A stretch of DNA of 64,000 nucleotides from Perna viridis (taxonomy: Eukaryota), in the NCBI GenBank assembly GCA_037379345.1, contig CM074514.1:50096001-50160000 (forward strand), in the 5' to 3' direction. Both the position numbers and the translations under genes were made by a program. The notes below the pieces were generated by a model. That model searched no databases and was not told the origin of the DNA. It saw only the letters and a program-made list of their open reading frames with translations. Shown here piece after piece: positions 14,225-58,500 of the stretch. Positions within the stretch are counted from its first letter, which is position 1, and each line of letters starts with the position of its first letter.

Positions 14225-14432
14225 AAGCAGAGGACGCTTACTCTACTGGTGCACATGGTCCATGCTCCCAGTTTTTAGTGGAGTCCGAGTTGCTCGTTTC
14301 CTTTTGTTGCTTTGTACGTCTTATTTTGGTTATTTTATGTTCTTTGTGTGTCCGTTTTCCATGTCTGGTCTTTGGGCCTGGATTGCATTCTTTTTATTTC
14401 CGCTAGAACCTTGGTTCCCTTGATATTCTTAC
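14225..14432 (+). mobile_element. 3' tail of the same Penelope-like family
   Basis: GTCCGAGTTGCTC...GGTCTTTGGGCCTGGATTGCATTC...CCGCTAGAACCTTGGTTCCCTTGAT matches 10661-10813. Further tails at ~25327-25424 (minus) and ~44856-44912. Confidence 0.6.
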
Positions 14433-24100: not shown

Positions 24101-27100
24101 GTATGACTGGGACCAGTACAATGTTAGCATCAGGCCAAACAGGGAATCTGAGTGTTGTCCGAGTGTGGAAGTTTAATACTGGAGAATGTTTAGCCATGTG
24201 TAAAACACATGTACATTCACTCAACTGTCTGAGGTATGATCTTATGCTAGATTAAAGGTTTTGTGATATTTGGGCAGTGTGATAAAACATTAGTAAAAAC
24301 ATTACAGAATAAAAAATACAATAAATGTAACCTAATTTTTCCTGAAAATTAATTTTATAGATGAGGTTTCAAATAAAAAAGTGCTAAATCATTTTAGCTC
24401 ACCTAGCTCAAAGGGTGATTTAAAAACTTTGTTGGTGAATAAGAGATAAAATTGCAGTCTTTGTTATTTTAAAAGTTAAGATGATATTTTTGTTCTTCAT
24501 GGTAGTTATGCACACAAAGGAAATATGCTGTGTGGTGTTGGGAAAGACAGTCAAGGTAAAAATGTAAGTATTTTTTAATGCATACAAGTGTTTTCAATTT
24601 TCATTGCTAAACTTTCAAATAATTTGTTTTCATAGTCCAAACTTCATGGAAATATCTTATCTCATTATAGTAACTGCACAATTCAGGAAATGTAATGTAT
24701 TCTGTTAAAGAGTTGAACTTGTATGTTACAAATCTGGTAAAGGCAACACTTCTTGCACCTAATTAGTTTTTAATTCAACTTAATGAGTTGGTTAGTTATT
24801 GAGTGAAGACAGCTTGGCATTTTTAATTTCTTGCAAGGGGAGGTAACCCAACTTACAGACTTAAATACTTTAAATTCAAAACTTGAACTAAAGTGGAGCC
24901 GGATAATTTTCTTCGATAATAAGCTCTCTCACAGTATTTTTAGTTTGAATTGCTACAAGTTATTTATAACTTCCTATGACAACCAAAGTAAAGGTCAAAT
25001 AAATACACTATATTTTTTATTGCAGATGGTGGTTATTTGGAACACCTCTAGAGTTATGAAGAACAGAGAGATATCTGTGACAGCTAAAGCTCACACAGAT
25101 GTTGACATTGTACGACTAAGAGTGTCTCCATTTGATGATACTAGGTAATAGAATAGAAGAATACTAATGAAAACTTTTGTCATGTGATATTTATTTCGTC
25201 AGAAGCAAAGTATCACTACCTTCATATGTAATGTGAAGAACCATACTGATTATTAAGATCAATGGTCAATGTCTTGAAAAGAATTTGTACACAGCTTAAT
25301 GTTTCATGCATTGCATTATCTGTGCAAGAGTAATCAAGGGAACTTAGATTATAGAGGAAATCAAAAGGATGAAACCCAAGGCCAAAGACCAGAATAGGAA
25401 AACAGACATACACAACCAAGAACATTTTGTAGTTTATTAATTGAAGTGAATATGATCCCTAATGTCTGTTTCTAGAATGGCTTCCTGCGGACGGGATAAC
25501 ATCAGATTATGGCGAGTGAAGGAGGGCCAGCTCCGTTCAGCACCTGTCAACCTCGGTGAATACCATTCCATGGAGTTTACTGATGTTGCTTTTGAAGCAG
25601 GTTATCATGCCGACAGAGATCCATCAGATAGACTTGTGTAAGTTTGGACAATATTTCCTTCTTTGTAACTTTTGAGAGGTCAGGCTAAAGAAAGGAAAAA
25701 GGACAGTCCTAAGTACAATAGTATTTCCTAGGGATTTAAAAGAAAATTGTTAATATTTGTTTGTTTAATTGTACCAAAAACTATATTTCATTATTAAAAC
25801 TTTTTACAACTTTGTTTTCCATCTGAAGTGAATAGAAAATAAATGAGGAATTCCATTTTGATTTATAGCTGTATTACATGTATGAAAATAAAATGCAACA
25901 ACCTTATAGATGATATAGATGATATAATGATACAGTATATTAATTCATGCTAACGGGATGATGGACAGCTAAGGGCGGGAAGTGGGATTCATTGGATGAT
26001 TTCTTTTCATTGTCGCTTTTTGAAATTGGGGAGGAATGTGGAATCTGCTACCCTTCCTGTTCATCCCTAATTAAATAGCTGTCTTTATCAAGGAAAAATA
26101 GTCATAGACATTTCATACATTTATCTGTGCCCTTATCACAACAAGTCAGGGATGCATAGTTTTATCTTTGTCTATCATTTTGTCATCCTGCAACAAACGG
26201 TTTTACAGACTTTTATTCCTAAACATTTGTTTTTATTTTAGTTATGCATGTAGTAGATCAGGACACATCTTTGAGATAGAGTTGCAGAAAGTTGCCATAC
26301 GCCATGTCAGACGATTATTGCCTAATACGAGTAAAACAAAAGATAAAGATAAACAAACTTTCAGATCAGGTAATTGTTTTATGAATGGAAGTAATATGAA
26401 ATACTTGAGGCCAACTAAAATGATTTTCTTGTTTCTCTTTTAGATACTGTTACAAATTTTATTGTTTGGGTACCTATTTAAATATTCTTTTTTGTGTTTC
26501 AGTCAAATCGTGAATTCCTAACAAATGTAAAATTTCAATTGAAAACTTTAATGGTCTTATGAACTCAAATAATTAAGAAATTCACAAACGAAAAAAATTG
26601 ACACCAATAATCAAAAGTATGGCCTATGTAATATCATGTTTAATACATTATCATATATAGAAGTATGGCCTATGTCATGTCATGTTTAGTATACATTATC
26701 GTATATAGAAGTATGGCCTATGTCATATCATGCTTAGTGTACATTATAGTATATAGAAGTATGGCCTTTTCATATCATGTTTAGTACACATTATTGTATA
26801 TAGAAGTATGGCCTATGTCATATCATGTTTAGTATACATTATCATATATATTATCGTATACATTATCGTATATGTTTTCAATACTGAAATAAAGTTGAAT
26901 TCATATTTTGTTTAAAAAAATAACAGAAAACTTGCATTTCACTATCATTTTCCATGTTTCACGGTGCATTAAACAACCTCTGTGTGACTTCCTATTTACA
27001 TTTAAAGAATGTTATTTTTTAGGTCCAGGTATAGGATTAAACTGTATGTCTGTGAATGAGACTTTCTGTGTCACTGGTTCAGATGATGGATACCTCAGAC

Positions 27101-42100: not shown

Positions 42101-45100
42101 TTTTTTCCATTTGAGATAGAGAGCCCCCTCTTGTCATTGTCAAATGCTAGACCAAGAGTATTAACTTTCCATGTAACAATGCACAGTTTTGTAAGTAGAC
42201 TCATCCTCCTTTCAGGTGAACAATCTATCTATATGTAATAGTGAACATTTTGCCTCCGGTGCTGATGATGGTAGTGTAAGAGTTTGGTCCCTTGACAGCC
42301 GAGAACAGACTTTACAGTTCCAGGTCTTAGACCAGGTAATTATTAAAGAGATAAGAATAGGGGAAATGTTCATGAAACTTTGTAACAGGACTCCTCAGTT
42401 GGCATACTTTCAAAATGGTTAGAGTTAGGAAATCTTCCAAGTGGTTGTGGTCTTTGAGTAGGGCATCAAGCTGTACAAAGGCTCTTCAGTAAGTGTACTT
42501 TCAAGATGGTTAGAGTTTAGGAACCATCCGAGATAAATTTGGGAACTTGTTAGAACATCAATCAGTAATATACTATAAGAGGATACAGCCCAGTCAACAA
42601 TGTAGAGTATGCCCCTTGATGTGCATGAGTAATTGTATGTCATCACTGAAAAATATTTTTTACATTTCTTCATCTGTACAAGAAATTATAGAACTAGTGT
42701 CCAGTGTTCTAAATGTTGACTTTTGTTGCACAGCTTTGTTACCTTGATTACACAGAGTAATTCTTATTTGAGAAGTATGACACTGAGATTAAAAGGTCAA
42801 AAGTTGAGGTCTGATGTACATAACATGCAGTAAGTTTGACTTGACAGATTTTAATTTTAATAAAAATTGCACAGACATAATCATAATCTATAAGACATTA
42901 TTCATTTTGGAAAAATGGTCTAAGCTCAGTGCTACTCTTTCTTAAGTATTTTATTTACTTGCTGGAAACTTAGAGCTTTGCTCTTTTGTGTATTGCAAAA
43001 AAAAGATAATAAGATTAAGTAGGGTCTTACTTCATACACATTATCCATAGTAAGTGGAGTTAGCTTCAATATTATTTTTGCCATTTGTGATTTTTTTAGG
43101 CATGCACATGTATAGACTTCTCCCCTATAAAACAAGATGGTATCATTAAAACTACAGTCAGTAACACCTCAGCTGCTGCTGTCACCTCCCACCAGAAGAT
43201 TGATGTAAACTTCATGCCCCTGCTTGCTGCTGGATACAGTAATGGAACAGTCCGAGTGTTTGATATCAACAAAGCTGAAATGATACTGAAGATGCATCCA
43301 CATGCTGTTGCAGTAACTGCCCTTAAATTTTCTTCTGATGGTATGTATTCAATTATTGGAAACAATGTGTAATCGGGGCAAAACTATTCGTTATGCACAC
43401 TTAAACCATCATACATTACTGCTTATTTACAAACTGATAGATTGATTGATAGTTGATTGTTAGTGTTAAAAGCCAAAGCAGCAATATTTCTGCTTTATCC
43501 AGGCAATGAACATGAAATGATGATGAAATGAAAAATGGGATGGGACACAAGAATAGTAGGGCCAACAAATTTTGATTTCCACTAGAAATAGAGAGAGTGG
43601 GTAGGGTGAGGCAATTTAGCTGCCTAAGGAGGAGTGCAAAGGTTCACTCTCCTATAGAGTACCACTGCAGAGTTCCCAAGAAACATGGCATCTCTCCCAA
43701 CACACTGCATGACCATAATTTGCAATCAGATTTTCCATATCATAGCCTAACAACCCCCTAGAATATAGCATGCCAGGGATACATGTACACACACTTGTTG
43801 TTGTATACGCTTAAACCACCATGTAATTTTACTTGGGATCTCAATGGTATGTTATCAGTAATACTTGGTTGACTATTTTGTAGAATCATATTCAATTTGA
43901 TACTTTATTACAATATTTACAAAAATTTTCATTGTTTATAATGTTTTCTGTGATAAATATTGGTGTCAATTATAAGATTGTTTCAGGATAAGTTAACCAG
44001 TTGCCGACCTTGCCCGTTTGTGACAGCATTCTAAAGTATTTAGTCAAACATATGCCTGATTTTATAATTTATATTTCAGGGCGTATGATTTTAACAGGAG
44101 GAAGTGATGGACTCATTGCCATTAGTAGTCCAACCACTGGGATAACAGTCCGTGTAATCTCTGACCACAAGGGGGCGCCAATCACAAACATTGATGTGAC
44201 CTTGTGTCAGGATCTGGAGTTGACCGTCTCTGCCTCTCAACTCTGGTTGGCAGCCAGTGCTGATAGGCGTGTGAGTGTCTGGTCCGCTGATTGGTCAAAG
44301 GATGTTTGTGAGCTTGTTGATTGGCTAACTTTCCCTGCTCCTGCATTCACACCAGATGGCACTGTCATAGCTAAACAAGATCAAAAGGTGATAAATATAG
44401 CATTTAGTTTTTTATTTATTATATTTGTATTGTGTATTTCTTGATACAATATATTTTTTTATTTTCGGGGCATTTCTTACTTGACCTCTTTAGACTGCTT
44501 TTCTGTATGTCATTTTACACTTAGTCAGCTAAGATACATTACATGTAGGTACATGTATTAACACACATTATTATATAGATAGCAGTAATAAACCAAATGT
44601 TCCCAGTGTAAAAATTGTCGATATTTCACTTAAAAAAAATTCTGTAATTTCATTCTTGGGCTTTATTCCGCCAAAACATCACAACAAGAATATCAAACTG
44701 CCGTTCACAAAGTTCGAAATTTATATTAAAAATCGCAACCAACAATGGCCAGGATAATAAATAACCAAAATATGATCACATGTACACGCAGTGAGATTTA
44801 ACAGTCCTCATTAAATCTAGGGTTTGTCTGCACTTGTGATCATATTTTGGTTATTGTCCCTGGATAACTTTCTTTTGATTTCCGCTACAACCTTGGTTCC
44901 CTTGATTACTCTTTCCAACTAATTATCCTGTTAGTAAAATAATGGCAAAATTGTTTCAAGTTCTGTTTTTAGGATAATGATTTTCTGTGTTCAATATGAT
45001 TTTTTTTTCTATTCCAGATTTCAACTTATCATTAATTTCATTCTGTATATTTACTTCAGTATTTGTTTTTGTTAAGAATGAGGCAACTACATTTGAAAAA

Positions 45101-48967: not shown

Positions 48968-50586
48968 TTACATGAGTTCCATACAATGAATTTTTATATC
49001 AGCGTAACATCCAACCCACTATTTACATTCACGATCAATATCAATAGTGGTTGGATACTCAATCCCAATGGCCTCCTCGATCTGATGACAGACAATGACC
49101 TGTCCAGACTGGTTCAGTATATGTATGTATATATTCAACCAGTCCGTAACAAGAACCATACCCGTAGAGGTCACTGTGAAGTCAAAAGAAAAAAATTGAT
49201 CTCCTTCTACTTGACATAAACCACTATATACCCACTTGATTTGTCCCCTATAATCCAGTGCCACCACCCTTCCCTTCTTTACTTCACCTAAAGAACCAAT
49301 GTCTTGTGTATCAATAACTAAGATAATATCATTACAGGTAACAATCCTACATGGCCAGGTAAACAGTCTCTGATTGTCATTGTCATAATCATAGGTATGT
49401 TTTATGTCACCTGACTGATTCAGAACCACAACTTTTCTGACACTCGTGGGTTTGACATCTATATTCCCTGATTCAGTCAGTCCTACTACTAGTTCCTTTT
49501 GTTTATTTATATGAACCCTAATGTCTTTAATGGAGAGAATGATTTGAAGGTTTTCAATGTTCCATCTTTTTTATACAGCATTAAATTTTTATCCTTTGTT
49601 GATAAGTTCCCGATTCTCCTTCATTGTCATGTCATTTAGTTTTATATCTTCTGTTTTCTTCACTATCCTCATTATTAAACTGAACTGTTTGTAATTTGTT
49701 AAATTCATATGCAATGAATTTTGTCTTACCATTACTTGAAATTATTTTATAATTCCCTTTCAGTTCAGTTTGATAAGATTTCAATAACTTCAATGTGGGA
49801 ACTTTACAAATGTCACCAAATACTTTACTTGATGACAAATCCGAGATGTCACGGGGAGTGAATTTTATAAGTGTTGGATATATTTCATTGGTTGTTATCT
49901 CAGGTAACCATGTTTTCAAAGACGTGCCTAATGAGAAAACATCTTCAGCCAAGTGGGAACTCAGGACCTTCTCTTGTTCATCTTTCTTGGGTGAGAGGGC
50001 ATTTAGGTTACTTTTTGTCAAGGTTAGATCATCTTGTATTGGATTGAACATGGATTCTAGCTGTTCCAGCATGTCATGTGTAAATCAATGGTTTTTTTAA
50101 TATCTTCCTCGTTTTGCAAAATTTTAAGGTTTTGTTATGTCATAGTGTTGTTTTGAGTCAGTGTATACTTTCTGGATTTTGTCTTCATGTGACTTCAAAT
50201 GGGAGAACTGCTCATCGACTGCAACTTTGAACTCTAATCTTTTCAAGTAAATCTTCATAACTGCTCCAAAGATCATCAGTGTCACGAGATTTATGTGACT
50301 CTTTATTGCAGAGGGCACAAATTGCTACAGTACAGGACACGTTTCCTACTGTTATGTTTAGAGCAGGTAAGTTGCCCAGGTTCACTCTACGTTGTCTCTC
50401 TGCAGCGTCATCTGTTCCTGCTTCCTGATAGTTGATTATCTTATGCCCTTTTGAAGATTCAATTTTAGAATGTATGTTATTAGAGCATAATTGACACAGA
50501 TACAGGTTACAATCAATACTTTTCCAGCATATCTCAGATTTATGACAAAACTGGCACTTGGCAGGACTCTGGGCTCTATCAACCAT
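48968..50586 (-). pseudogene. Disrupted intronless B-box / coiled-coil / NHL beta-propeller (TRIM2/3/71-like, RING-less) gene
   Basis: B-box CQFC...C..YLCQLC...HSKI...GHKII. NHL-like C-terminus RLFTWPCRI...VVALDYRGQIKWVYSG...VLVTD...IHILNQSGQ. Split over several frames, with an in-frame TAG in ...DRECK*WVGC. 5' UTR acceptor near 50712. Confidence 0.8.
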
Positions 50587-51954
50587 TATTAGGTTGAATT
50601 AGTTTTATTTTGCCTAATTTTCTTTATTCGCCTTATATGTATAAAATTAGTTTTGTTAAATCTGGAATCGAACCTTTCTTTGAGTCGTACATTAAGGCCC
50701 TTTGTTTAACCTACAAAGAGACAAATGTGTTAATTTCTTTGTCTTGTGTGAGCAGATTTAAGAAAAAAGGGAAATGAAATTTCTGCAATGTGTTGGTTAA
50801 AAGTCACATATAGATATATAAATTCTTTTTCATGAGGGAAGTTTATAGTACTTCTGAAATCTGTAGGAAGTCCGAAAATAAAGATTTGCAGGAAATGTTG
50901 CCGAAAAATTTATATTTTAAATATTTTTGAAGGCTTTCTATTGTTCTCGGTGAAATAATGCAACAGAAATGCCCCAATAATAAGAAAAATCATTATAAAT
51001 ATGAATTTTATACCACAAATTTACCATAAGATTTTCATATTGAAATTTATTCTTAGTTTTACGATTTGATCCGAGATGAACGAGGAGCTTTTCCATGGTG
51101 TATTTCCCATTCCCATTTGTGACTATGTCATTTCTGTTTTTTTTTACCATAACTAAACTGAGTTTTGTGAGATGAAAGTTTTTGTACTAACAAATTAAGT
51201 GTTTACTATTAAAACAAATCTTTAAATATATTTAGTTAACTAGTTTGAAAGCTACCACTACATTTTTTAGTAAGTTTTGTTCATGTAAACTAAAAAAACT
51301 TATGAGCAATGCTCACTAAATTTATACCTACACTTTCCTGTTTGTTAAAATACATCTTATGACATCAAAAAAAATAATAAAAAGTCCGTAGCAATTTCTT
51401 TAATGCAATTGCGTTCAGTGATGTAGGAGTCACGGATAAGAGATGAGTAATCTCTGCGTAATAGATTAAGGAAGGATGAACACCACTGTCAGTATATACA
51501 TCTACTTTAAAAGGGGATGTTATAATAAAACATCGTACATGTACTAATTGTAATCACACTTAAATCCATTTTGAAGATGACGTTGGTCACATTTTCACCA
51601 AGCACAATGATTAAACAATTTATGAACAATGCTCTTATTTTTTCCCATTGAACTTTGATACGCAAAAATAATACACAGGCATTTATTTGTTCTGATAAAA
51701 AATATGAGTGCATGTTTGGTAATAGTCGGGTAGGCGGTAACGCATTAATAATAGTTGATAAACGTTTTCCTTTCATGTAACACATTTTGCCAACCAGGAT
51801 AACCTTCTTTATAGCTGATCTGATCCGAAAGAAAGAATATCGCTTGGCTAGATCCTTTAATCTCAGTTTCAGATGGATACATCATAACGATCCACGAGTT
51901 CATGATGACGACCATAAAACTTCTGTAGTGATGACTTCAATCTGGTAGCAATAT

Positions 51955-52310
51955 AACCCTGTTCCAGAAGCCTATTTGTTAGAGTTTTAGCACGATACAA
52001 AAAGTCTGCGTACTTTCGGCAAGCTCTGGCATAACGCATGAGTTGTTATATGAACACTCCATACGCAGGAGCCGAAGGGATGTTGCCACAAATGAAAGGA
52101 AAGTTAACAATTCTGAATGAAAAGTCATCATGTTTGTCGTAAAGTTTGGTCAATAGTTTTCCTTTACCATCGATTTCTAATTGTAGGTCAAGATATGAGG
52201 CTGACTTTACAGTGTCTGTAGTATCCTTTATCTCAAATTCCTTTGGGTAGATGCGATGTATCAAATCCCCGAAATTAGGATTGTTTAAAGATAATACGTC
52301 ATCTATATAG
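51955..52310 (-). mobile_element. Penelope-like RT fragment
   Basis: YIDDVLSLNN...IYPKEFEIKDTTD...SASYLDL...TKLYDKHDDFSFRIVNFPFICGNIPSAPAYGV...RYARAC. Confidence 0.75.
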
Positions 52311-54199: not shown

Positions 54200-55149
54200 C
54201 TGATAAATTTCATTATTTTATATGCATTGTTTGATAGAATATATGCTTGCAAGAAGCAATTCAGTCCTTGAATGGACGTAGTCTAAAAGAATAGAGATTA
54301 TTCTGATTCTGTTCTTAACACAAACTACATCACACAAAGACGAAAGAAGGCTGTACTTAAGTCAGAAGACCCAACTGAAAAGGAAAGTAGCTCTTTCCCC
54401 AGAAACAGAAATGTTGTAAAGCCCGCAACCCATGACGGGAAGAGGCCGTGGGTGGATTACAAGTCCCATTTTGATGCATGTTCAAGTATAAATGATTAGT
54501 CAGACACTGAAAAGGGTTTGTATCTGGCCATGTCATTAACGGGACAAACCCAGGGGGTTCTACAAAATTTGTCTGAAGATCAAAGGCAAAATTATAAAGA
54601 GCATGTAAGGTCTCTTAAGGAGAGGTTTACTCCTGCAAACCAGACTGCTGAACTTTATCGAACACAGTTGCGAGGACGCCATCAAAAAGCAGCGGAAAGC
54701 CTTTCTGAGCTAGGCCAGTACATAAGGCGCTTAGCAAGCCTTGCTTATCCAACAGCTTCCAAATGAAGTTCGTTAAACACTTGCCAAGGAGCAGTTCATT
54801 GACGGACATAAAAGTGTTGACATGAGACTTCAAGTTAAACAAGCTAGACCATCAGACTTAAATGACGTCATACAATATGCCGTCGATAGAAGCTTTCAAT
54901 ACAGCAGAGCTTAAGAGAAAATAAAAAAAGAGTTTCTTAAGGACTACCGCACTTGACAGCGACTCTGTCGCGACAAACTATAGGACGTTACATCTACTCT
55001 AGAATACGCAAACAGCAAGACAAACTATAGTACGTTAGATCTTCTCGAGAATACGCAAACAGCACTGATTGATTTGCAGAAAGAAGTAAAAACTTTGAAG
55101 GAAAATTCCAATTGGTCTGAAAAGTTTCTATTTAGAAGGAATAATAGAT

Positions 55150-55560
55150 TTTTGTATTTAAAAACGACTGGGTCGATTCCACTGCTTGTGGACCTGAGGT
55201 CCCCGAGGGTATTCACCAACCCAGTAGTCAGACTTGCCTGACCCCGAAGAATATCATATTACATCTACCCTATTTATGAAATCCTATTTAAACAGTATTC
55301 CAAATTTAAAAATACGTGAAACACAGAGGCTTCATTTCTTGCATTGCATATGGTAAAACCTCTCGGTGATGGATTTGACTTCCTCTTCGATAGTTTTGGT
55401 TGTGAGTACTTCTTATGTATGTAAGTAATATTTTATTATGAACTTAATACATAACCTACATATTTATTTAGGTGCTGCTGATGAAAGGTTACTCCTTGAA
55501 ACACATGTACAGCATATCGATATTTACAATATCTAAAACTGGTATTTTTTTGTATTTTAA
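55150..55560 (+). mobile_element. ~400-nt retrozyme-like insertion in Gypsy gag
   Basis: Non-coding segment between gag coiled-coil sequence and the CCHC knuckle, bounded by TTTTTGTATTT(T)AAA direct repeats, containing a hammerhead motif. Confidence 0.6.
55472..55515 (+). ncRNA. Minimal type I hammerhead ribozyme
   Basis: Stem I GTGCTG/CAGCAT; core CTGATGA; stem II AAGG-TTACT-CCTT; GAAA; short stem III (A)C-ACAT-G(T); GUA cleavage triplet at 55507-55509. Confidence 0.85.
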
Positions 55561-58500
55561 AGGACAAGGAAAGCCCGATGTTTTAAATGTGGGAAATTTA
55601 ATCATTTCAAGAAAGATTGTCAGGAAAGTAGGGTAACAAGTGAAAAAGAAAGTACAACTAAGGCTCAGGAAACCACATCTGGGAAAAAGAATGGGAAAAT
55701 ATGGGTGAACAAACTGGCCACTAAAGCCGGAATGTTCATTCAATGGTACCAATGCAAAAATGTTGATTGATGTTGACTCACATATCAAAGAAATTGTTTG
55801 ATAGCATTCATTCGCATGTAATGACACAAATGAACAGAGAGATACTGACTGCCAATGGTTCTCTTTTGACTTTATTTGGGAAAACCATAATTGGTATAGC
55901 CATTAATGGATATGTCTGTTCAAACATAGCTGTAGTGGTTGAGCTCACCATCGACGGTATATTGGGAATCGACTTTCCAAAATTGTGTTATCGATGTTAC
56001 TAAAGGTCTTTCAGTTAAAGGTGCAGAAACCCGTTTACAGTTTCAAGATCAGATAGGTTGTTATAGGGTATTTAGCAGAGACGGTAAATTTGCCCCCACG
56101 TAGTGAAGTACTAGTGTCTGGGACCGTCAAGGAACATTTTTTTAATTAAGAATTTGGTATTGTTCAACCAACACAAGAATTTGTAGATTCAAATAAAGGT
56201 TTTAGATTTATGATGAAATTCAAACAATTAATGAAAGAACTATAGTAGGACAACTACATCCTGTCGAGGAGGTAATTACACCAGAACCTATGGGTGACAG
56301 AACACACTATCCTCTCATATCCAGCAACTGTATAATAATACAGTTAAAGATTTGTCTGAAAACAAAAGAAAACTGGTTAAAACTTTCCTTGCCAAATATT
56401 CAGACGTGTTTTCGAAAACAGATTCTGAATTAGGCAAGACCACTGTTGTTAAACACAGCGTCAAGACAAATGAAGTCAGACCGCACAAAGAACCACCAAG
56501 ACGGGTTCCATTTCACTTATAACCTGAGGTTGATAATACAATTGATGACATATTGGAAAAGGGCATCATTGAGTCATCTGTTACTCCATGGGCCTCAGGT
56601 GTTGTTTTAGTGATGGCTCTACATGGTTTTGCATAGACAATCGTATGCTTAACAGCTTAACAGTCAAGAATGCATATCCATTTCCAAGAATCGATGATTT
56701 TCTTGAACAACTTTTCTGTTTCTGTTTAAATGGTTTCCTACTCTGGATTTGTGTTCTGGGTACTGGCATGTAGAGATGGAAGCCTTAGACAGGTTCAAGA
56801 ATGCGTTTGCAACACGAAAGGGTTTGTTTCAGTTCAGAGTACATTGTATTTCCCTTCGGATTGTGCAATGCTCAAGCCACTTTTGAGAGGCTGATGTAGA
56901 CAGTACTTGCAGGTTTGCAATGGGAGTTATGCTTAATATATCTTGACTATATCATTGTGTTTGCAAACAGCTTTGAGGGGATGTTGAAAAAATTGGCATT
57001 AGGTTTGATAGATTGAGATCGGCTGGATAGAAGCGTAAACCACGAAAATGAACGCTATTTGCTACAGAGGTAGAGTATTTAGGTCACGTTATATCTGAGA
57101 ACGGGGTCTTTACCGATCCACAGAAAATTGAAATTGTAAAGAACTGGCCCACTCCATCAAACGTAACTGATGTAAGATCATTTCTGGGTTTCTGTAGTTA
57201 CTACAGACATTTCATCGCGAGTTTTTCAGCTGTCGCGAAATCCTTTCACAGACTTACAGAGAAAAATAAGAAGTTTGATTGGTCATATGAATGTGATGAA
57301 GATTTCCTAAAGCTGAAAGAGTGCCTAACCACAACACCCGTCCTTGCTCATCCTGATTTCATCCATATTCTATACTGACGCAAGTGGCACAGCCATTGGT
57401 GCTGTACTTTCCCACATTAAAGACAACACTGAAAAAGTTATCGCTTATGCCAGCAGAAGGTTGTCAAAATCAGAGCGTAAATACTTTGTTACAAGAAGAG
57501 AACTTATTGCAGTGGTTAATTTTTCAATATACTTCAAAAACTATCTTTACGGCAAAACCTTCAAAATTCGTACATACCATATTTCGCTTCTGCAAGATGG
57601 TTAAAGGTCCTGTCATCTTACGACAAGAAAATCGAGCATATACCAGGTGTCAAACATAGAAATGCCGATTCTCTTAGTCGATTACCTCTCAAACAATGTG
57701 ATCATTGTAATGTTGTGAGAAGCAAAGATACAGGGTATTTATAGGACATTCACTGTCAGAATGGTAAAGGGTCAAACAAAACCTCATTGTTTCTGAGCTC
57801 TAAGAAGCTCAGAGTTCGGATAAGGACATAAAAATGGTAAAGGAATGGTTAGAAAGAAGTCAAAGACCATCCTGTGAAGAGGCTTATGACAACTATTTTA
57901 TGCGAAGCCTTTGGACACAATTTAACCAACTTTTTATTGGGGATGAATTGATTGGTAGGGTCTGGCAGATCATGGGTACAAAGATAATTTATCGTCAAGC
58001 GTTAGAGTTAGACACCTTAGAGTTACAAAAATATTAGGTAAGATAAGGCAAACGTTTTAATGGCCTGGTCAACAAGATGATGTATGATGGTATTTCGCGG
58101 GCTGTGAAAAATATGCAAAGCGCAAGTGGCCATTGCAAAAGAAACGTGCTCCTATGCAGATAGTTCAAGCAGGCGTGCCAATGGAGAGAATAGCTACTGA
58201 CATTTTAAGTGAACTACTACCTGAAACGGAAAACCATAACAAATATATGGCAGTTACTTCAGACTACTTCACTAAGTGGACTGAGGCATTTCAAATGCCA
58301 AAGATGAAAGCTCGAACTATGGCCAAGATTCTTGTTGAAGAAGTAGTAGCTCGTTTTGGGATACCGTATTCTATACATTCAGTTCAAGATGCACAATATG
58401 AAAGCAACTAGTTTGCAGAAATATGTAGTCTCTATGAAATTGCCAAGACGAGAACTACACTATATCATCCTAAGTCCGATGGTCGAAAGGTTTAATCAAA

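What the first reader, a model, noticed from the sequence alone, without database searches (positions are those of the whole stretch)
55150..55560. Hammerhead ribozyme in a ~400-nt retrozyme-like unit that interrupts Gypsy gag
Seen: 55472-55515 folds as a complete minimal type I hammerhead (stem I GTGCTG/CAGCAT, CUGAUGA, stem II AAGG/CCUU, GAAA, 2-bp stem III within the palindrome ACAUGU, predicted cleavage after GUA at 55509). It lies in non-coding DNA that separates gag sequence from the gag CCHC knuckle and is bounded by TTTTTGTATTT(T)AAA direct repeats about 400 nt apart. Established: minimal type I hammerheads with short palindromic stem III are typical of Penelope-like elements and metazoan non-LTR retrozymes, which yield small circular RNAs and often cleave as dimers. 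Inference: this is a monomer of a non-coding, self-cleaving mobile RNA, possibly mobilised by the Penelope-like family whose RT fragments occur in this window. The core is intact although the host element is heavily decayed.
Basis: partly seen in the sequence, partly recalled or inferred. Interest (0 to 1): 0.82.

Follow-up and report, generated by a model that had tools for sequence, protein, structure and literature searches.

The report
Fossil hammerhead retrozyme copy in Gypsy gag
The 411-base segment is one old, decayed copy of an abundant small non-coding mobile element that carries a self-cleaving hammerhead RNA motif, of the kind already described in mussels; it landed inside a dead Gypsy-type retrotransposon and shares its first 60 bases with a Penelope-like (Naiad-type) element of the same genome.

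Summary
Window 55472-55515 reads as a complete type I hammerhead. It has a 6-bp helix I, CUGAUGA, a 4-bp helix II with a 5-nt loop, GAAA, and a 2-bp helix III with a 4-nt loop. Cleavage is predicted after A55509. It is the only such motif in the window, against 0.025 expected.

Four relatives of the host Gypsy-type element carry only TTAAA where the window has 55150-55560, so the segment is an insertion. It belongs to a family with about 2,800 candidate units and 1,616 hammerhead cores in this 723-Mb genome. Most copies are a 5'-truncated upstream unit plus one full unit of about 385-395 nt, with a nearly fixed A/T-rich 3' end.

The layout, the hammerhead geometry and a 60-nt module match the published Mytilus retrozyme Mg353.

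That module is also the exact 5' end of a young, abundant Naiad-type Penelope-like element. Naiads are reported to lack hammerheads.

The window copy is a fossil: 13% diverged, palindrome mutated, G10.1 changed to A, and no partner ribozyme nearby. RNA-seq shows family reads but no cleavage ends or circles.

This is a new member of a known kind. First-stage notes on other windows of this genome flagged the same family.

The parts
55150..55560 (+). Whole inserted segment (411 nt). It stands in place of TTAAA in the host element, so about 406 nt are net insertion. It equals roughly 1.03 units of the repeat family.
   Evidence: Empty sites in four relatives. Genome-wide copies at 83-88% identity covering q1-408/411.
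55150..55166 (+). Residual tail of a 5'-truncated upstream unit (TTTTGTATTT) plus the junction heptamer (AAAAACG here, AAGAACC in the family). This is the left 'direct repeat'.
   Evidence: Tandem junctions in other loci read GTATTT-AAGAACC-ACTGGG. The start of the upstream partial unit varies from locus to locus.
55167..55225 (+). 5' structured module (ACUGGGU...ACCCAGU long hairpin). It is homologous to the exact 5' end of a Naiad-type PLE and to a module in the Mytilus retrozyme Mg353.
   Evidence: BLAST hits of 80-87% over 60-63 nt to L080 and L072. PLE-to-PLE homology starts exactly at this module. The same fold is predicted in the retrozyme and the PLE. Mg353 comparison was by eye. Only 2/59 differences from the family majority.
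55226..55471 (+). Non-coding body of the unit, the most diverged part
   Evidence: Outside the hammerhead and the 5' module, 51/310 differences from the family majority. No ORF over 64 aa overlaps the segment.
55472..55515 (+). Type I hammerhead motif. Predicted cleavage lies between A55509 and C55510.
55516..55560 (+). A/U-rich 3' tail ending ...GGTATTTTTTTGTATTTT(AA). The family's 3' ends fall within this stretch, and the last 2-3 bases cannot be assigned to element or target.
   Evidence: 3' junctions of 30 loci. Empty-site comparison.
54650..55149 (+). Host LTR-retrotransposon gag, left of the insertion (decayed)
   Evidence: Relatives at 75-86% identity. A continuous 302-aa ORF spans the site in L050.
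55561..58411 (+). Host element to the right of the insertion: CCHC knuckle 55579-55620, aspartic protease 55767-56003, RT-RNaseH 57344-57604, integrase core 58133-58411. The order PR-RT/RH-INT is the Gypsy/Ty3 order. All parts are fragmented.
51872..52246 (-). Fragment of a Penelope-like element ORF (RT C-terminal region), 87% identical over 125 aa to an ORF next to a GIY-YIG domain in L081. It is context only, not part of the insertion.

Best explanation
Window 55150-55560 is a single, old, inactive copy of a high-copy non-autonomous retroelement of the metazoan non-LTR retrozyme class.

The living family has a unit of about 385-395 nt with three parts:
- a 60-nt structured 5' module;
- a variable non-coding body;
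- a canonical metazoan type I hammerhead about 50 nt before an A/U-rich 3' end.

The hammerhead has a 6-bp helix I, a 4-bp helix II, and a 2-bp helix III closed by a palindromic loop.

Inferred mechanism, following the published model for this class:
1. Tandem or partial-tandem copies are transcribed.
2. Two hammerheads pair through the palindrome ACACGUGU into a double hammerhead and cut after GUA.
3. This releases unit-length RNA that host ligase can circularise.
4. A Penelope-like reverse transcriptase/GIY-YIG endonuclease copies this multimeric or circular RNA from a nick in A/T-rich DNA. Here the most likely enzyme comes from the Naiad-type family that shares the 5' module.
5. Copying is primed through microhomology in the UAUUUAA region.
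6. Synthesis runs for more than one unit and stops at a variable point. This gives the observed shape: a truncated unit, one full unit, and a near-fixed 3' end.

Shown here: the motif, the insertion, the family, its architecture, the module shared with the PLE, and lower divergence of the hammerhead and the 5' module.

Inferred, not shown: self-cleavage, circles, and which enzyme mobilises the element.

The window copy itself cannot yield a unit-length RNA. It has one ribozyme only, a damaged palindrome, and A10.1.
For: Motif: direct reading; unique in the window, 0.025 expected.

Insertion: (four empty sites reading ...AATAGAT[TTAAA]AGGACAAGG...).

Family size: 2,829 candidates, 40 scored, 83-88% identity; 1,616 matches to the 33-nt core with up to 3 mismatches, control 0.

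Architecture. In 25 of 30 loci an upstream partial unit with a variable start precedes one full unit. 3' ends fall within q389-411.

Hammerhead retention and recognition:
- 21 of the 29 independent family loci keep at least one full descriptor hit.
- The core positions are nearly invariant.
- Copy L002 hits RF00163 at E 9.9e-5.

Dimer: the family hammerhead cofolds into the textbook double hammerhead with an 8-bp intermolecular helix III, at -27.1 against -16.4 kcal/mol for two monomers.

Constraint:
- Among the 29 younger copies, the hammerhead shows 3.0% differences and the rest 5.5% (p 6e-5).
- In the window copy, the hammerhead plus the 5' module show 5/103 differences and the rest 51/310 (p 0.002).
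- DNA word depth is 2-10 times higher over the hammerhead bins.

Known relative: the Mytilus retrozyme Mg353 has the same module, the same spacing of about 53 nt from the cleavage site, and the same helix geometry, while all three helices differ in sequence. Published mussel units are 350-390 bp and make circRNAs.

PLE link. The PLE has an N-terminal GIY-YIG domain, a CxC motif, tandem arrays of 3,410-nt period, and copies 96-98% identical. One search gives at least 1,974 candidates.

5' starts of the upstream partial units cluster within 8 nt of the cleavage site (5 of 29 against 1.2 expected, p 0.006).
Against: - No Rfam hammerhead hit for the window copy at any threshold tried. The family copy stays below the gathering score.
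- The 10.1-11.1 pair is G.U in the family and A-U in the window, not the G-C that is typical of active hammerheads (cites its conservation).
- RNA-seq shows only 1,241 family reads in 10.35 M. Of these, 83% continue into unlike sequence. There is no pile of ends at the cleavage site and no circle-specific joint. The library is probably poly(A)-selected, so this is weak evidence.
- The 383-nt monomer does not fold better than shuffles (z -1.44).
- The retrozyme's 3' end differs from the 3' end of the Naiad family. Only the 5' end is clearly shared.
- The 5' starts near the cleavage site are offset by -8 to +3 nt. They are not exact.
Confidence: 0.85

Rival explanations
1. The element is a SINE-like non-autonomous partner of the Naiad PLE and is mobilised as a plain linear unit-length RNA. 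The partial tandems arise from the template jumping that all PLEs show (pseudo-LTRs). The hammerhead is a passenger or has another role, and no circular RNA intermediate is involved.
For: Autonomous PLEs show the same architecture, a truncated copy plus a full copy (Craig et al. 2021). Naiads spread without any hammerhead. The unit starts with the PLE's own 5' end. The RNA-seq reads show no circles or cleavage ends. A B-box-like GGGTCGATACC and a T6 run near the 3' end are present.
Against: The hammerhead is less diverged than the body, both within the family and in the old window copy. The homologous mussel unit is proven to self-cleave and to accumulate as circRNA. The inter-unit junction is invariant in every tandem copy seen, which fits a continuous circular or multimeric template. 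Most copies read through the T6 run.
Confidence: 0.25
2. The segment is a solo pseudo-LTR or terminal fragment of an autonomous hammerhead-bearing PLE, not a separate non-autonomous family.
For: PLE pseudo-LTRs carry minimal hammerheads. PLE fragments lie in the window. A first-stage note reports a GIY-YIG peptide next to a minimal hammerhead elsewhere in this genome (untested).
Against: The family repeats with its own 385-395-nt period and has no ORF. None of 30 loci centred on GIY-YIG domains holds a hammerhead by my descriptor. Only 60 nt of the unit match any of them. The matching PLE has a 3,410-nt period.
Confidence: 0.05
3. The motif is a chance hammerhead look-alike inside an ordinary satellite or SINE that spreads at the DNA level.
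For: Rfam finds nothing in the window copy. The fold energy is unremarkable.
Against: 0.025 such motifs are expected per window. The core is kept in most of 1,616 copies. A family copy matches RF00163 at E 9.9e-5. The element is homologous to an experimentally active mussel retrozyme. Copies are dispersed over all large contigs with different flanks and 5' truncation.
Confidence: 0.02

Closest known systems
Non-LTR retrozymes of metazoans, in particular the Mytilus galloprovincialis retrozyme (clone Mg353; Cervera and de la Pena 2020, PMC7229834)
   Same: Both have a non-coding unit of 350-400 nt present in thousands of copies, often in tandem. Both carry a type I hammerhead with 4-bp helix II plus 5-nt loop and 2-bp helix III plus 4-nt palindromic loop. 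In both, about 53 nt separate the cleavage site from a conserved ACCACTGGGTCGAT...CCCAGTAGTCAG module. PLEs co-occur in the genome.
   Different: The species is different. The Mytilus-type helix II pattern is absent from this genome. All three helices have other sequences (palindrome ACACGUGU versus ACGCGCGU). The 10.1-11.1 pair is G.U rather than G-C. Self-cleavage and circRNA are not shown here. The window copy is a solo, decayed monomer.
Canonical metazoan type I hammerheads that act as dimers (newt satellite 2, Schistosoma Sm-alpha, PLE hammerheads; Forster 1988, Cervera and de la Pena 2014, PMC4209133)
   Same: Helix I has 6 bp, helix II 4 bp, and helix III 1-2 bp capped by a small palindromic loop. 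The predicted active form is a double hammerhead.
   Different: The loop-loop tertiary contacts of fast-cleaving hammerheads were not looked for here. The published mussel hammerheads are reported to lack most of the conserved loop nucleotides. The window copy's palindrome is interrupted.
Naiad clade of Penelope-like elements (Craig et al. 2021, PMC8557442)
   Same: The PLE that shares the 60-nt 5' end has an N-terminal GIY-YIG domain, a CxC linker motif, a downstream RT and a unit of about 3.4 kb. It forms tandem arrays and has a very high copy number, as described for bivalve Naiads. Insertions are partial tandems.
   Different: Naiads are reported to lack canonical hammerheads, and the PLE copies seen here lack one too. 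The retrozyme has no ORF and a different 3' end. Only the 5' module is demonstrably shared.
Vertebrate retrozymes as derivatives of PLE pseudo-LTRs (Li, Clavereau and Pollet 2026, bioRxiv 10.64898/2026.07.22.740005)
   Same: Sequence similarity between a retrozyme and the terminus of a PLE in the same genome.
   Different: In that work the partners are Neptune/Poseidon-type PLEs of Xenopus that themselves carry hammerheads. Here the partner is a hammerhead-less Naiad type in an invertebrate.

Membership tests
Hammerhead ribozyme, type I | Invariant core: C3 U4 G5 A6 N7 G8 A9, G12 A13 A14, A15.1-U16.1 pair, H17 not G | tested here: met
   Read directly at 55478-55484, 55498-55501 and 55508-55509. 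Nearly invariant in 30 copies.
Hammerhead ribozyme, type I | Three helices around the core, with the open ends in helix I | tested here: met
   Descriptor hit with helix I 6 bp, helix II 4 bp and helix III 2 bp. Pairing is kept in 26-30 of 30 copies at every pair.
Hammerhead ribozyme, type I | G10.1-C11.1 pair at the base of helix II | tested here: not met
   A-U in the window copy and G.U in 27 of 30 copies. This weakens the expected activity but not the fold.
Hammerhead ribozyme, type I | Rfam RF00163 gathering score (34 bits) | tested here: not met
   Window copy: no hit, even at E<=10. Family copy L002: 25.3 bits, E 9.9e-5, full model length.
Hammerhead ribozyme, type I | Site-specific self-cleavage after H17 | not testable with these tools
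   RNA-seq raw reads show no pile of ends at the site. The library type makes this uninformative.
Metazoan non-LTR retrozyme | Short (about 170-400 nt) non-coding unit carrying a type I hammerhead, without LTR, PBS or ORF | tested here: met
   Unit of 385-398 nt. No ORF over 64 aa overlaps the segment. PBS and PPT were not searched for specifically.
Metazoan non-LTR retrozyme | Many genomic copies arranged as head-to-tail repeats | tested here: met
   Met for the family: 25 of 30 loci hold more than one unit and one holds more than two. The window copy holds only 1.03 units.
Metazoan non-LTR retrozyme | Expressed as unit-length linear and circular RNA | tested here: inconclusive
   Family reads are present in RNA-seq, but they are mostly chimeric and show no circle-specific joint.
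Metazoan non-LTR retrozyme | Co-occurrence with autonomous PLEs, and sequence relation to a PLE terminus | tested here: met
   At least 486 GIY-YIG candidates. A 60-nt 5' module is shared with a Naiad-type PLE.
Solo PLE pseudo-LTR | The unit is contained in the terminal repeat of an RT/EN-coding PLE | tested here: not met
   Only 60 of about 390 nt match any of 30 PLE loci, and no hammerhead was found in them.

The most novel reading that the evidence does not exclude
Bivalve hammerhead retrozymes are non-autonomous derivatives, or parasites, of Naiad-type Penelope-like elements, the one PLE clade reported to have no hammerhead. They keep the Naiad's structured 5' terminus, conserved from this genome to Mytilus with compensatory changes in its apical stem, and combine it with their own ribozyme. 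The same family has also produced a 45-nt-period array that consists of the hammerhead alone and occurs at four or five loci. That would fit rolling-circle copying of a minimal circle.
Probability: 0.4. Interest if true: 0.6.

Novelty: new member of a known kind. Interest (0 to 1): 0.4.

Why it matters
The window copy itself is a routine fossil of a class described in 2020. It matters mainly as an annotation: this is not part of the Gypsy element, not a gene, and not a new ribozyme.

The family behind it is more useful. It gives a second bivalve retrozyme that is homologous to the experimentally studied mussel one but differs in the sequence of all three hammerhead helices. That is natural covariation support for the ribozyme.

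It also gives a concrete candidate mobiliser. The unit begins with the exact 5' end of a young, very abundant Naiad-type PLE. Naiads are said to lack hammerheads, so this pairing bears on an open question raised by Craig et al. 2021: are hammerheads a functional part of PLE retrotransposition, or separate parasites of PLEs?

Tried and rejected
- **Rfam on the window.** Scans at gathering score and at E<=10 gave no hammerhead. RF00163 over the whole genome scored only 73 of 62,479 candidates and returned two non-hammerheads.
- **Target-site duplication.** Rejected. The repeats are unit periodicity plus A/T microhomology.
- **Pol III SINE reading** (B-box-like GGGTCGATACC and a T6 terminator). 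Not supported, because most copies read through the T6 run and no A box lies in the proper place. Not excluded either.
- **Hammerheads in PLE loci.** None found by my descriptor in 30 GIY-YIG loci.
- **Same-species full-length Naiad proteins.** The protein word search with the Naiad ORF2 found homologues at 76% identity or less. Some carry RVT_1 or GIY-YIG, and named hits include Ostrea edulis. No same-species record could lead to a 3' end.
- **PDB search of ORF2.** Nothing useful.
- **RNA evidence.** No support for cleavage ends or circles. The joint 2004 to 1655 is a unit variant 33 nt shorter, not a circle junction.
- **Covariation in the 5' module.** None among 7 sequences held here. The two compensatory pairs against Mytilus were seen by eye only, because the paper's letters have no reference and were not typed into a tool.
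- **Naiad 3' motif fused to the retrozyme tail.** There are 9 exact genomic matches and one contig in each of two runs. Naiads prefer TA-rich targets and the motif is extremely common, so my rough estimate is that a few matches are expected by chance. I treat this as a lead only.
- **Safeguards.** No consensus of the Gypsy element was made. For the non-coding repeat, a per-column majority was used inside scripts only as a yardstick and was neither printed nor saved.

Full report
**1. The observation**

Window 55472-55515 reads GUGCUG-CUGAUGA-AAGG/UUACU/CCUU-GAAA-C/ACAU/G-U-A-CAGCAU. This is a complete type I hammerhead.
- Helix I has 6 bp, with one G.U.
- The 5' core strand is CUGAUGA.
- Helix II has 4 bp and a 5-nt loop.
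- G12-A14 and the A15.1-U16.1 pair are present.
- One further helix III pair (C-G) closes a 4-nt loop.

A descriptor I wrote for this topology finds this site and no other on either strand of the window. Shuffled windows give 0.025 hits on average, and none at the observed stem lengths.

Rfam does not report the window copy at any threshold tried. A near-majority copy of the same family does match RF00163 Hammerhead_1 over its whole length, at 25.3 bits and E 9.9e-5, which is below the gathering score of 34. The thermodynamic fold is unremarkable. That is normal for hammerheads with a 2-bp helix III.

**2. It is an insertion**

Searches of the window's own genome (723 Mb, 46 contigs) with the left and right flanks found relatives of the host element. 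In four of them the two flanks are joined by just TTAAA, reading ...GGAATAATAGAT-TTAAA-AGGACAAGG.... The window has 55150-55560 in that place.

In one relative a 302-aa ORF runs through the site and continues into an aspartic protease domain. In the window the order to the right is CCHC knuckle, protease, RT-RNaseH, integrase. That is the Gypsy/Ty3 order. The insertion splits the codons F-K six codons before the knuckle.

**3. The family**

The 411-nt segment has 2,829 candidate matches in the genome. The 40 that were scored are 83-88% identical to it and lie on all large contigs. A count of the family's 33-nt hammerhead core with up to three mismatches gives 1,616 sites against 0 for the control.

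Twenty-nine full units from other loci differ from their per-column majority by 1-11% (median about 5%). The window copy differs by 13% and has no close relative, so it is an old copy.

In 25 of 30 loci the insertion is an upstream unit truncated at a variable point, followed seamlessly by one full unit. One locus holds two full units plus a part. The 3' ends fall in a narrow A/T-rich stretch...CTGGTATTTTTTGTATTT, within q389-411.

In tandem, the unit continues GTATTT-AAGAACC-ACTGGGTCG. The window's left "direct repeat" (TTTTGTATTT, then AAAAACG-ACTGGGTCG) is therefore a very short upstream partial unit. The right one is the normal 3' end. The target ...AGATTTAAAAGG... resembles the element's ...GTATTTAAGAAC..., so the junctions sit in microhomology and no clear target duplication can be named.

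**4. The ribozyme in the family**

- Most copies read AUGCUG-CUGAUGA-GAGG/UUACU/CCUU-GAAA-C/ACGU/G-U-A-CAGCAU.
- Of the 29 independent family loci, 21 keep at least one full descriptor hit. The core positions are nearly invariant, and every helix pair is kept in 26-30 of 30 copies.
- Helix III plus its loop forms the 8-nt palindrome ACACGUGU. Two copies cofold into the classical double hammerhead with an 8-bp intermolecular helix III, at -27.1 kcal/mol against -16.4 for two monomers. This matches the published description of canonical metazoan type I hammerheads, which cleave poorly alone and well as dimers in tandem transcripts.
- The window copy has CG changed to CA in the palindrome, so its best dimer is not the ribozyme dimer. 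It also has A instead of G at 10.1, G instead of A at the outer helix I pair, and no second hammerhead within reach.

Evidence for constraint:
- Among the younger copies the hammerhead columns carry 3.0% differences and the rest 5.5% (p 6e-5).
- In the old window copy the hammerhead and the 5' module together carry 5/103 differences and the rest 51/310 (p 0.002).
- In a DNA run, word depth over the hammerhead bins is 2-10 times that of the rest of the unit. This suggests that more diverged subfamilies share the hammerhead.

**5. Relation to what is known**

Cervera and de la Pena (2020) described non-LTR retrozymes in animals: tandem units of 170-400 nt with type I hammerheads, expressed as linear and circular RNA. 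Mytilus galloprovincialis has about 5,000 hammerheads in repeats of 350-390 bp. A cloned copy self-cleaves (kobs about 0.1 per min), and circRNAs are abundant in gonad and mantle.

Their supplementary table gives the cloned mussel unit Mg353. By eye it carries the following.
- The same module, ACCACTGGGTCGATGCCACTGCTGGTGGA...CCGAGGGTATCACCAGCCCAGTAGTCAG, starting about 53 nt after its cleavage site. The distance here is 54 nt.
- A hammerhead of identical geometry: helix II of 4 bp with a 5-nt loop, and helix III of 2 bp with a 4-nt palindromic loop (ACGCGCGU).
- Different sequences in all three helices.

This is homology of the element together with covariation of the ribozyme. I could not run it through an aligner because the paper's letters have no reference. 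The Mytilus-type helix II pattern is absent from this genome, so this is another species. The organism is not disclosed. The named protein relatives of its Naiad RT come from bivalves.

**6. The Penelope-like partner**

The genome holds at least 486 GIY-YIG candidates. BLAST of retrozyme units against 30 such loci gave one consistent hit: unit positions 15-77 match L080 and L072 at 80-87% over 60-63 nt.

The two PLE copies become alignable to each other exactly at this point, at ACTGGGTCGATACC.... It is therefore the 5' end of that PLE. The PLE has these features.
- An ORF with a GIY-YIG domain about 450 nt downstream.
- Then an ORF with a CSC motif, ADKA, and the RFIAGS start of a PLE RT. Its homologues carry RVT_1 and GIY-YIG.
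- Copies 96-98% identical, with at least 754-1,974 candidates.
- Tandem arrays of 3,410-nt period.

This is the N-terminal-EN, CxC, roughly 3.4-kb organisation of Naiads. Craig et al. (2021) report that Naiads dominate bivalve genomes and lack canonical hammerheads.

The module folds into the same long hairpin in retrozyme and PLE. No two-sided compensatory change occurs among the seven sequences I hold. Against Mytilus, the apical stem changes from GGACC/GGUCC to GGAGA/UCUCC (by eye).

The 3' ends differ. The Naiad ends ...CCTTGGTTCCCTTGATTACTCTTTC, a repeat of about 128 nt that is extremely common and has four copies in the window. The retrozyme ends ...GTATTT.

Chimeras of the Naiad 3' motif joined to the retrozyme's last ~33 nt occur nine times in the genome and in one contig in each of two presumed RNA runs. 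Chance adjacency in TA-rich targets cannot be excluded.

A 2026 preprint reaches the general conclusion that animal retrozymes derive from PLE pseudo-LTRs, using Xenopus and hammerhead-bearing Neptune/Poseidon elements. In the library searched, no paper links retrozymes to Naiads by sequence.

**7. RNA evidence**

Twenty of the 24 listed runs of the same organism hold the unit, and one 2026 RNA-seq run is kept as raw reads. I laid these on L002:1351-2226, which holds a partial plus a full unit with 150-nt flanks. The result was as follows.
- The raw RNA reads cover only the element: 1,241 of 10.35 M reads, with zero in the flanks.
- Of those reads, 83% continue into unlike sequence with sharply defined, agreeing loose ends. 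Most therefore come from diverged copies or from copies embedded in other transcripts.
- No place shows many molecules beginning or ending, and no joint is specific for circles.
- The one recurrent back-joint corresponds to a unit 33 nt shorter.

The library is ordinary paired cDNA, probably poly(A)-selected, which would lose small circles. I count this as no evidence either way.

**8. Mechanism and verdict**

The best-supported reading is a retrozyme life cycle.
1. Transcription of tandem copies.
2. Dimeric hammerhead cleavage.
3. Possible circularisation.
4. Target-primed reverse transcription by a PLE enzyme on a template longer than one unit, primed in the UAUUUAA region.

Starts of the upstream partial unit are enriched within 8 nt of the cleavage site (5 of 29, p 0.006). 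They are not exactly at it.

The main rival keeps the PLE partner but drops the circle, invoking linear RNA plus template jumping. My data do not separate the two.

The window copy is a dead monomer. The finding is real, correctly interpreted in the main, and belongs to a known class.

First-stage notes on other windows of this genome describe the same family. They mention a 392-nt tandem unit, a 375-bp unit sharing its lead motif with the Naiad 5' end, and a fossil array in a pseudogene. I tested the Naiad claim myself and it holds.

Noticed in passing
G000:C1:47448299-47449774 (-); also C1:47552751-47552831 (+), C2:67438896 (-), C9:39152659-39152829 (+): A tandem array of 45-nt period made of the hammerhead alone. 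The unit is CA(G/C)CATATCG + CTG + the 32-nt core up to GUA. The same internal deletion junction appears at four or five loci. In the big array most units read CACCAT, which breaks helix I. This could be a mini-unit that spread on its own.
   Followed up: partly
window 10689-10814, 14311-14424, 25321-25425 (-), 44848-44915; L080 (minus strand) 2278-2410: A very common repeat of about 128 nt ending ...CCTTGGTTCCCTTGATTACTCTTTC. It directly precedes the ACTGGGTCG 5' start in Naiad tandem arrays, so it is most likely the Naiad 3' end. Eight of 30 retrozyme loci hold a copy within 3.4 kb.
   Followed up: partly
G000:C3:46030159-46081549 (-) and C6:47135489-47151113 (+): Long head-to-tail arrays of a full-length Naiad-type PLE. 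The first has at least 16 units of 3,410 nt at 97% identity. The second has 4 units of about 5.1 kb, each with a 628-aa open frame.
   Followed up: no
G000:C2:30598170, C3:2973633, C3:13332465, C3:15040836, C8:27617598, C8:30078237, C11:37958949, C13:17848168, C14:32571915; L026:1220-1450: The Naiad 3' motif is joined within 0-12 nt to the retrozyme's terminal TTACAATATAT... tail. At C3:13332465 a hammerhead core lies about 300 nt downstream on the same strand. These may be template-switch chimeras or chance adjacency in TA-rich targets.
   Followed up: partly
L002:1622-1654 (unit positions about 240-272): An expressed unit variant lacks 33 nt. It appears as a 350-nt back-joint in 14 raw RNA reads and in one contig in each of two presumed RNA runs. 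It is not listed for the DNA run.
   Followed up: no
window 9736-10131 (-), 29276-30632 (+), 44001-44444 (+), 50212-50586 (-): Host gene pieces in the window: a CARD domain ORF, WDR90/POC16 beta-propeller exons, and a weak B-box zinc-finger ORF.
   Followed up: no
L007, L008, L011, L024 (flanks of retrozyme copies): Naiad EN or RT fragments lie within 1.5 kb of four of 30 retrozyme copies, in two cases on the same strand downstream. Given the Naiad copy number this may be chance.
   Followed up: no
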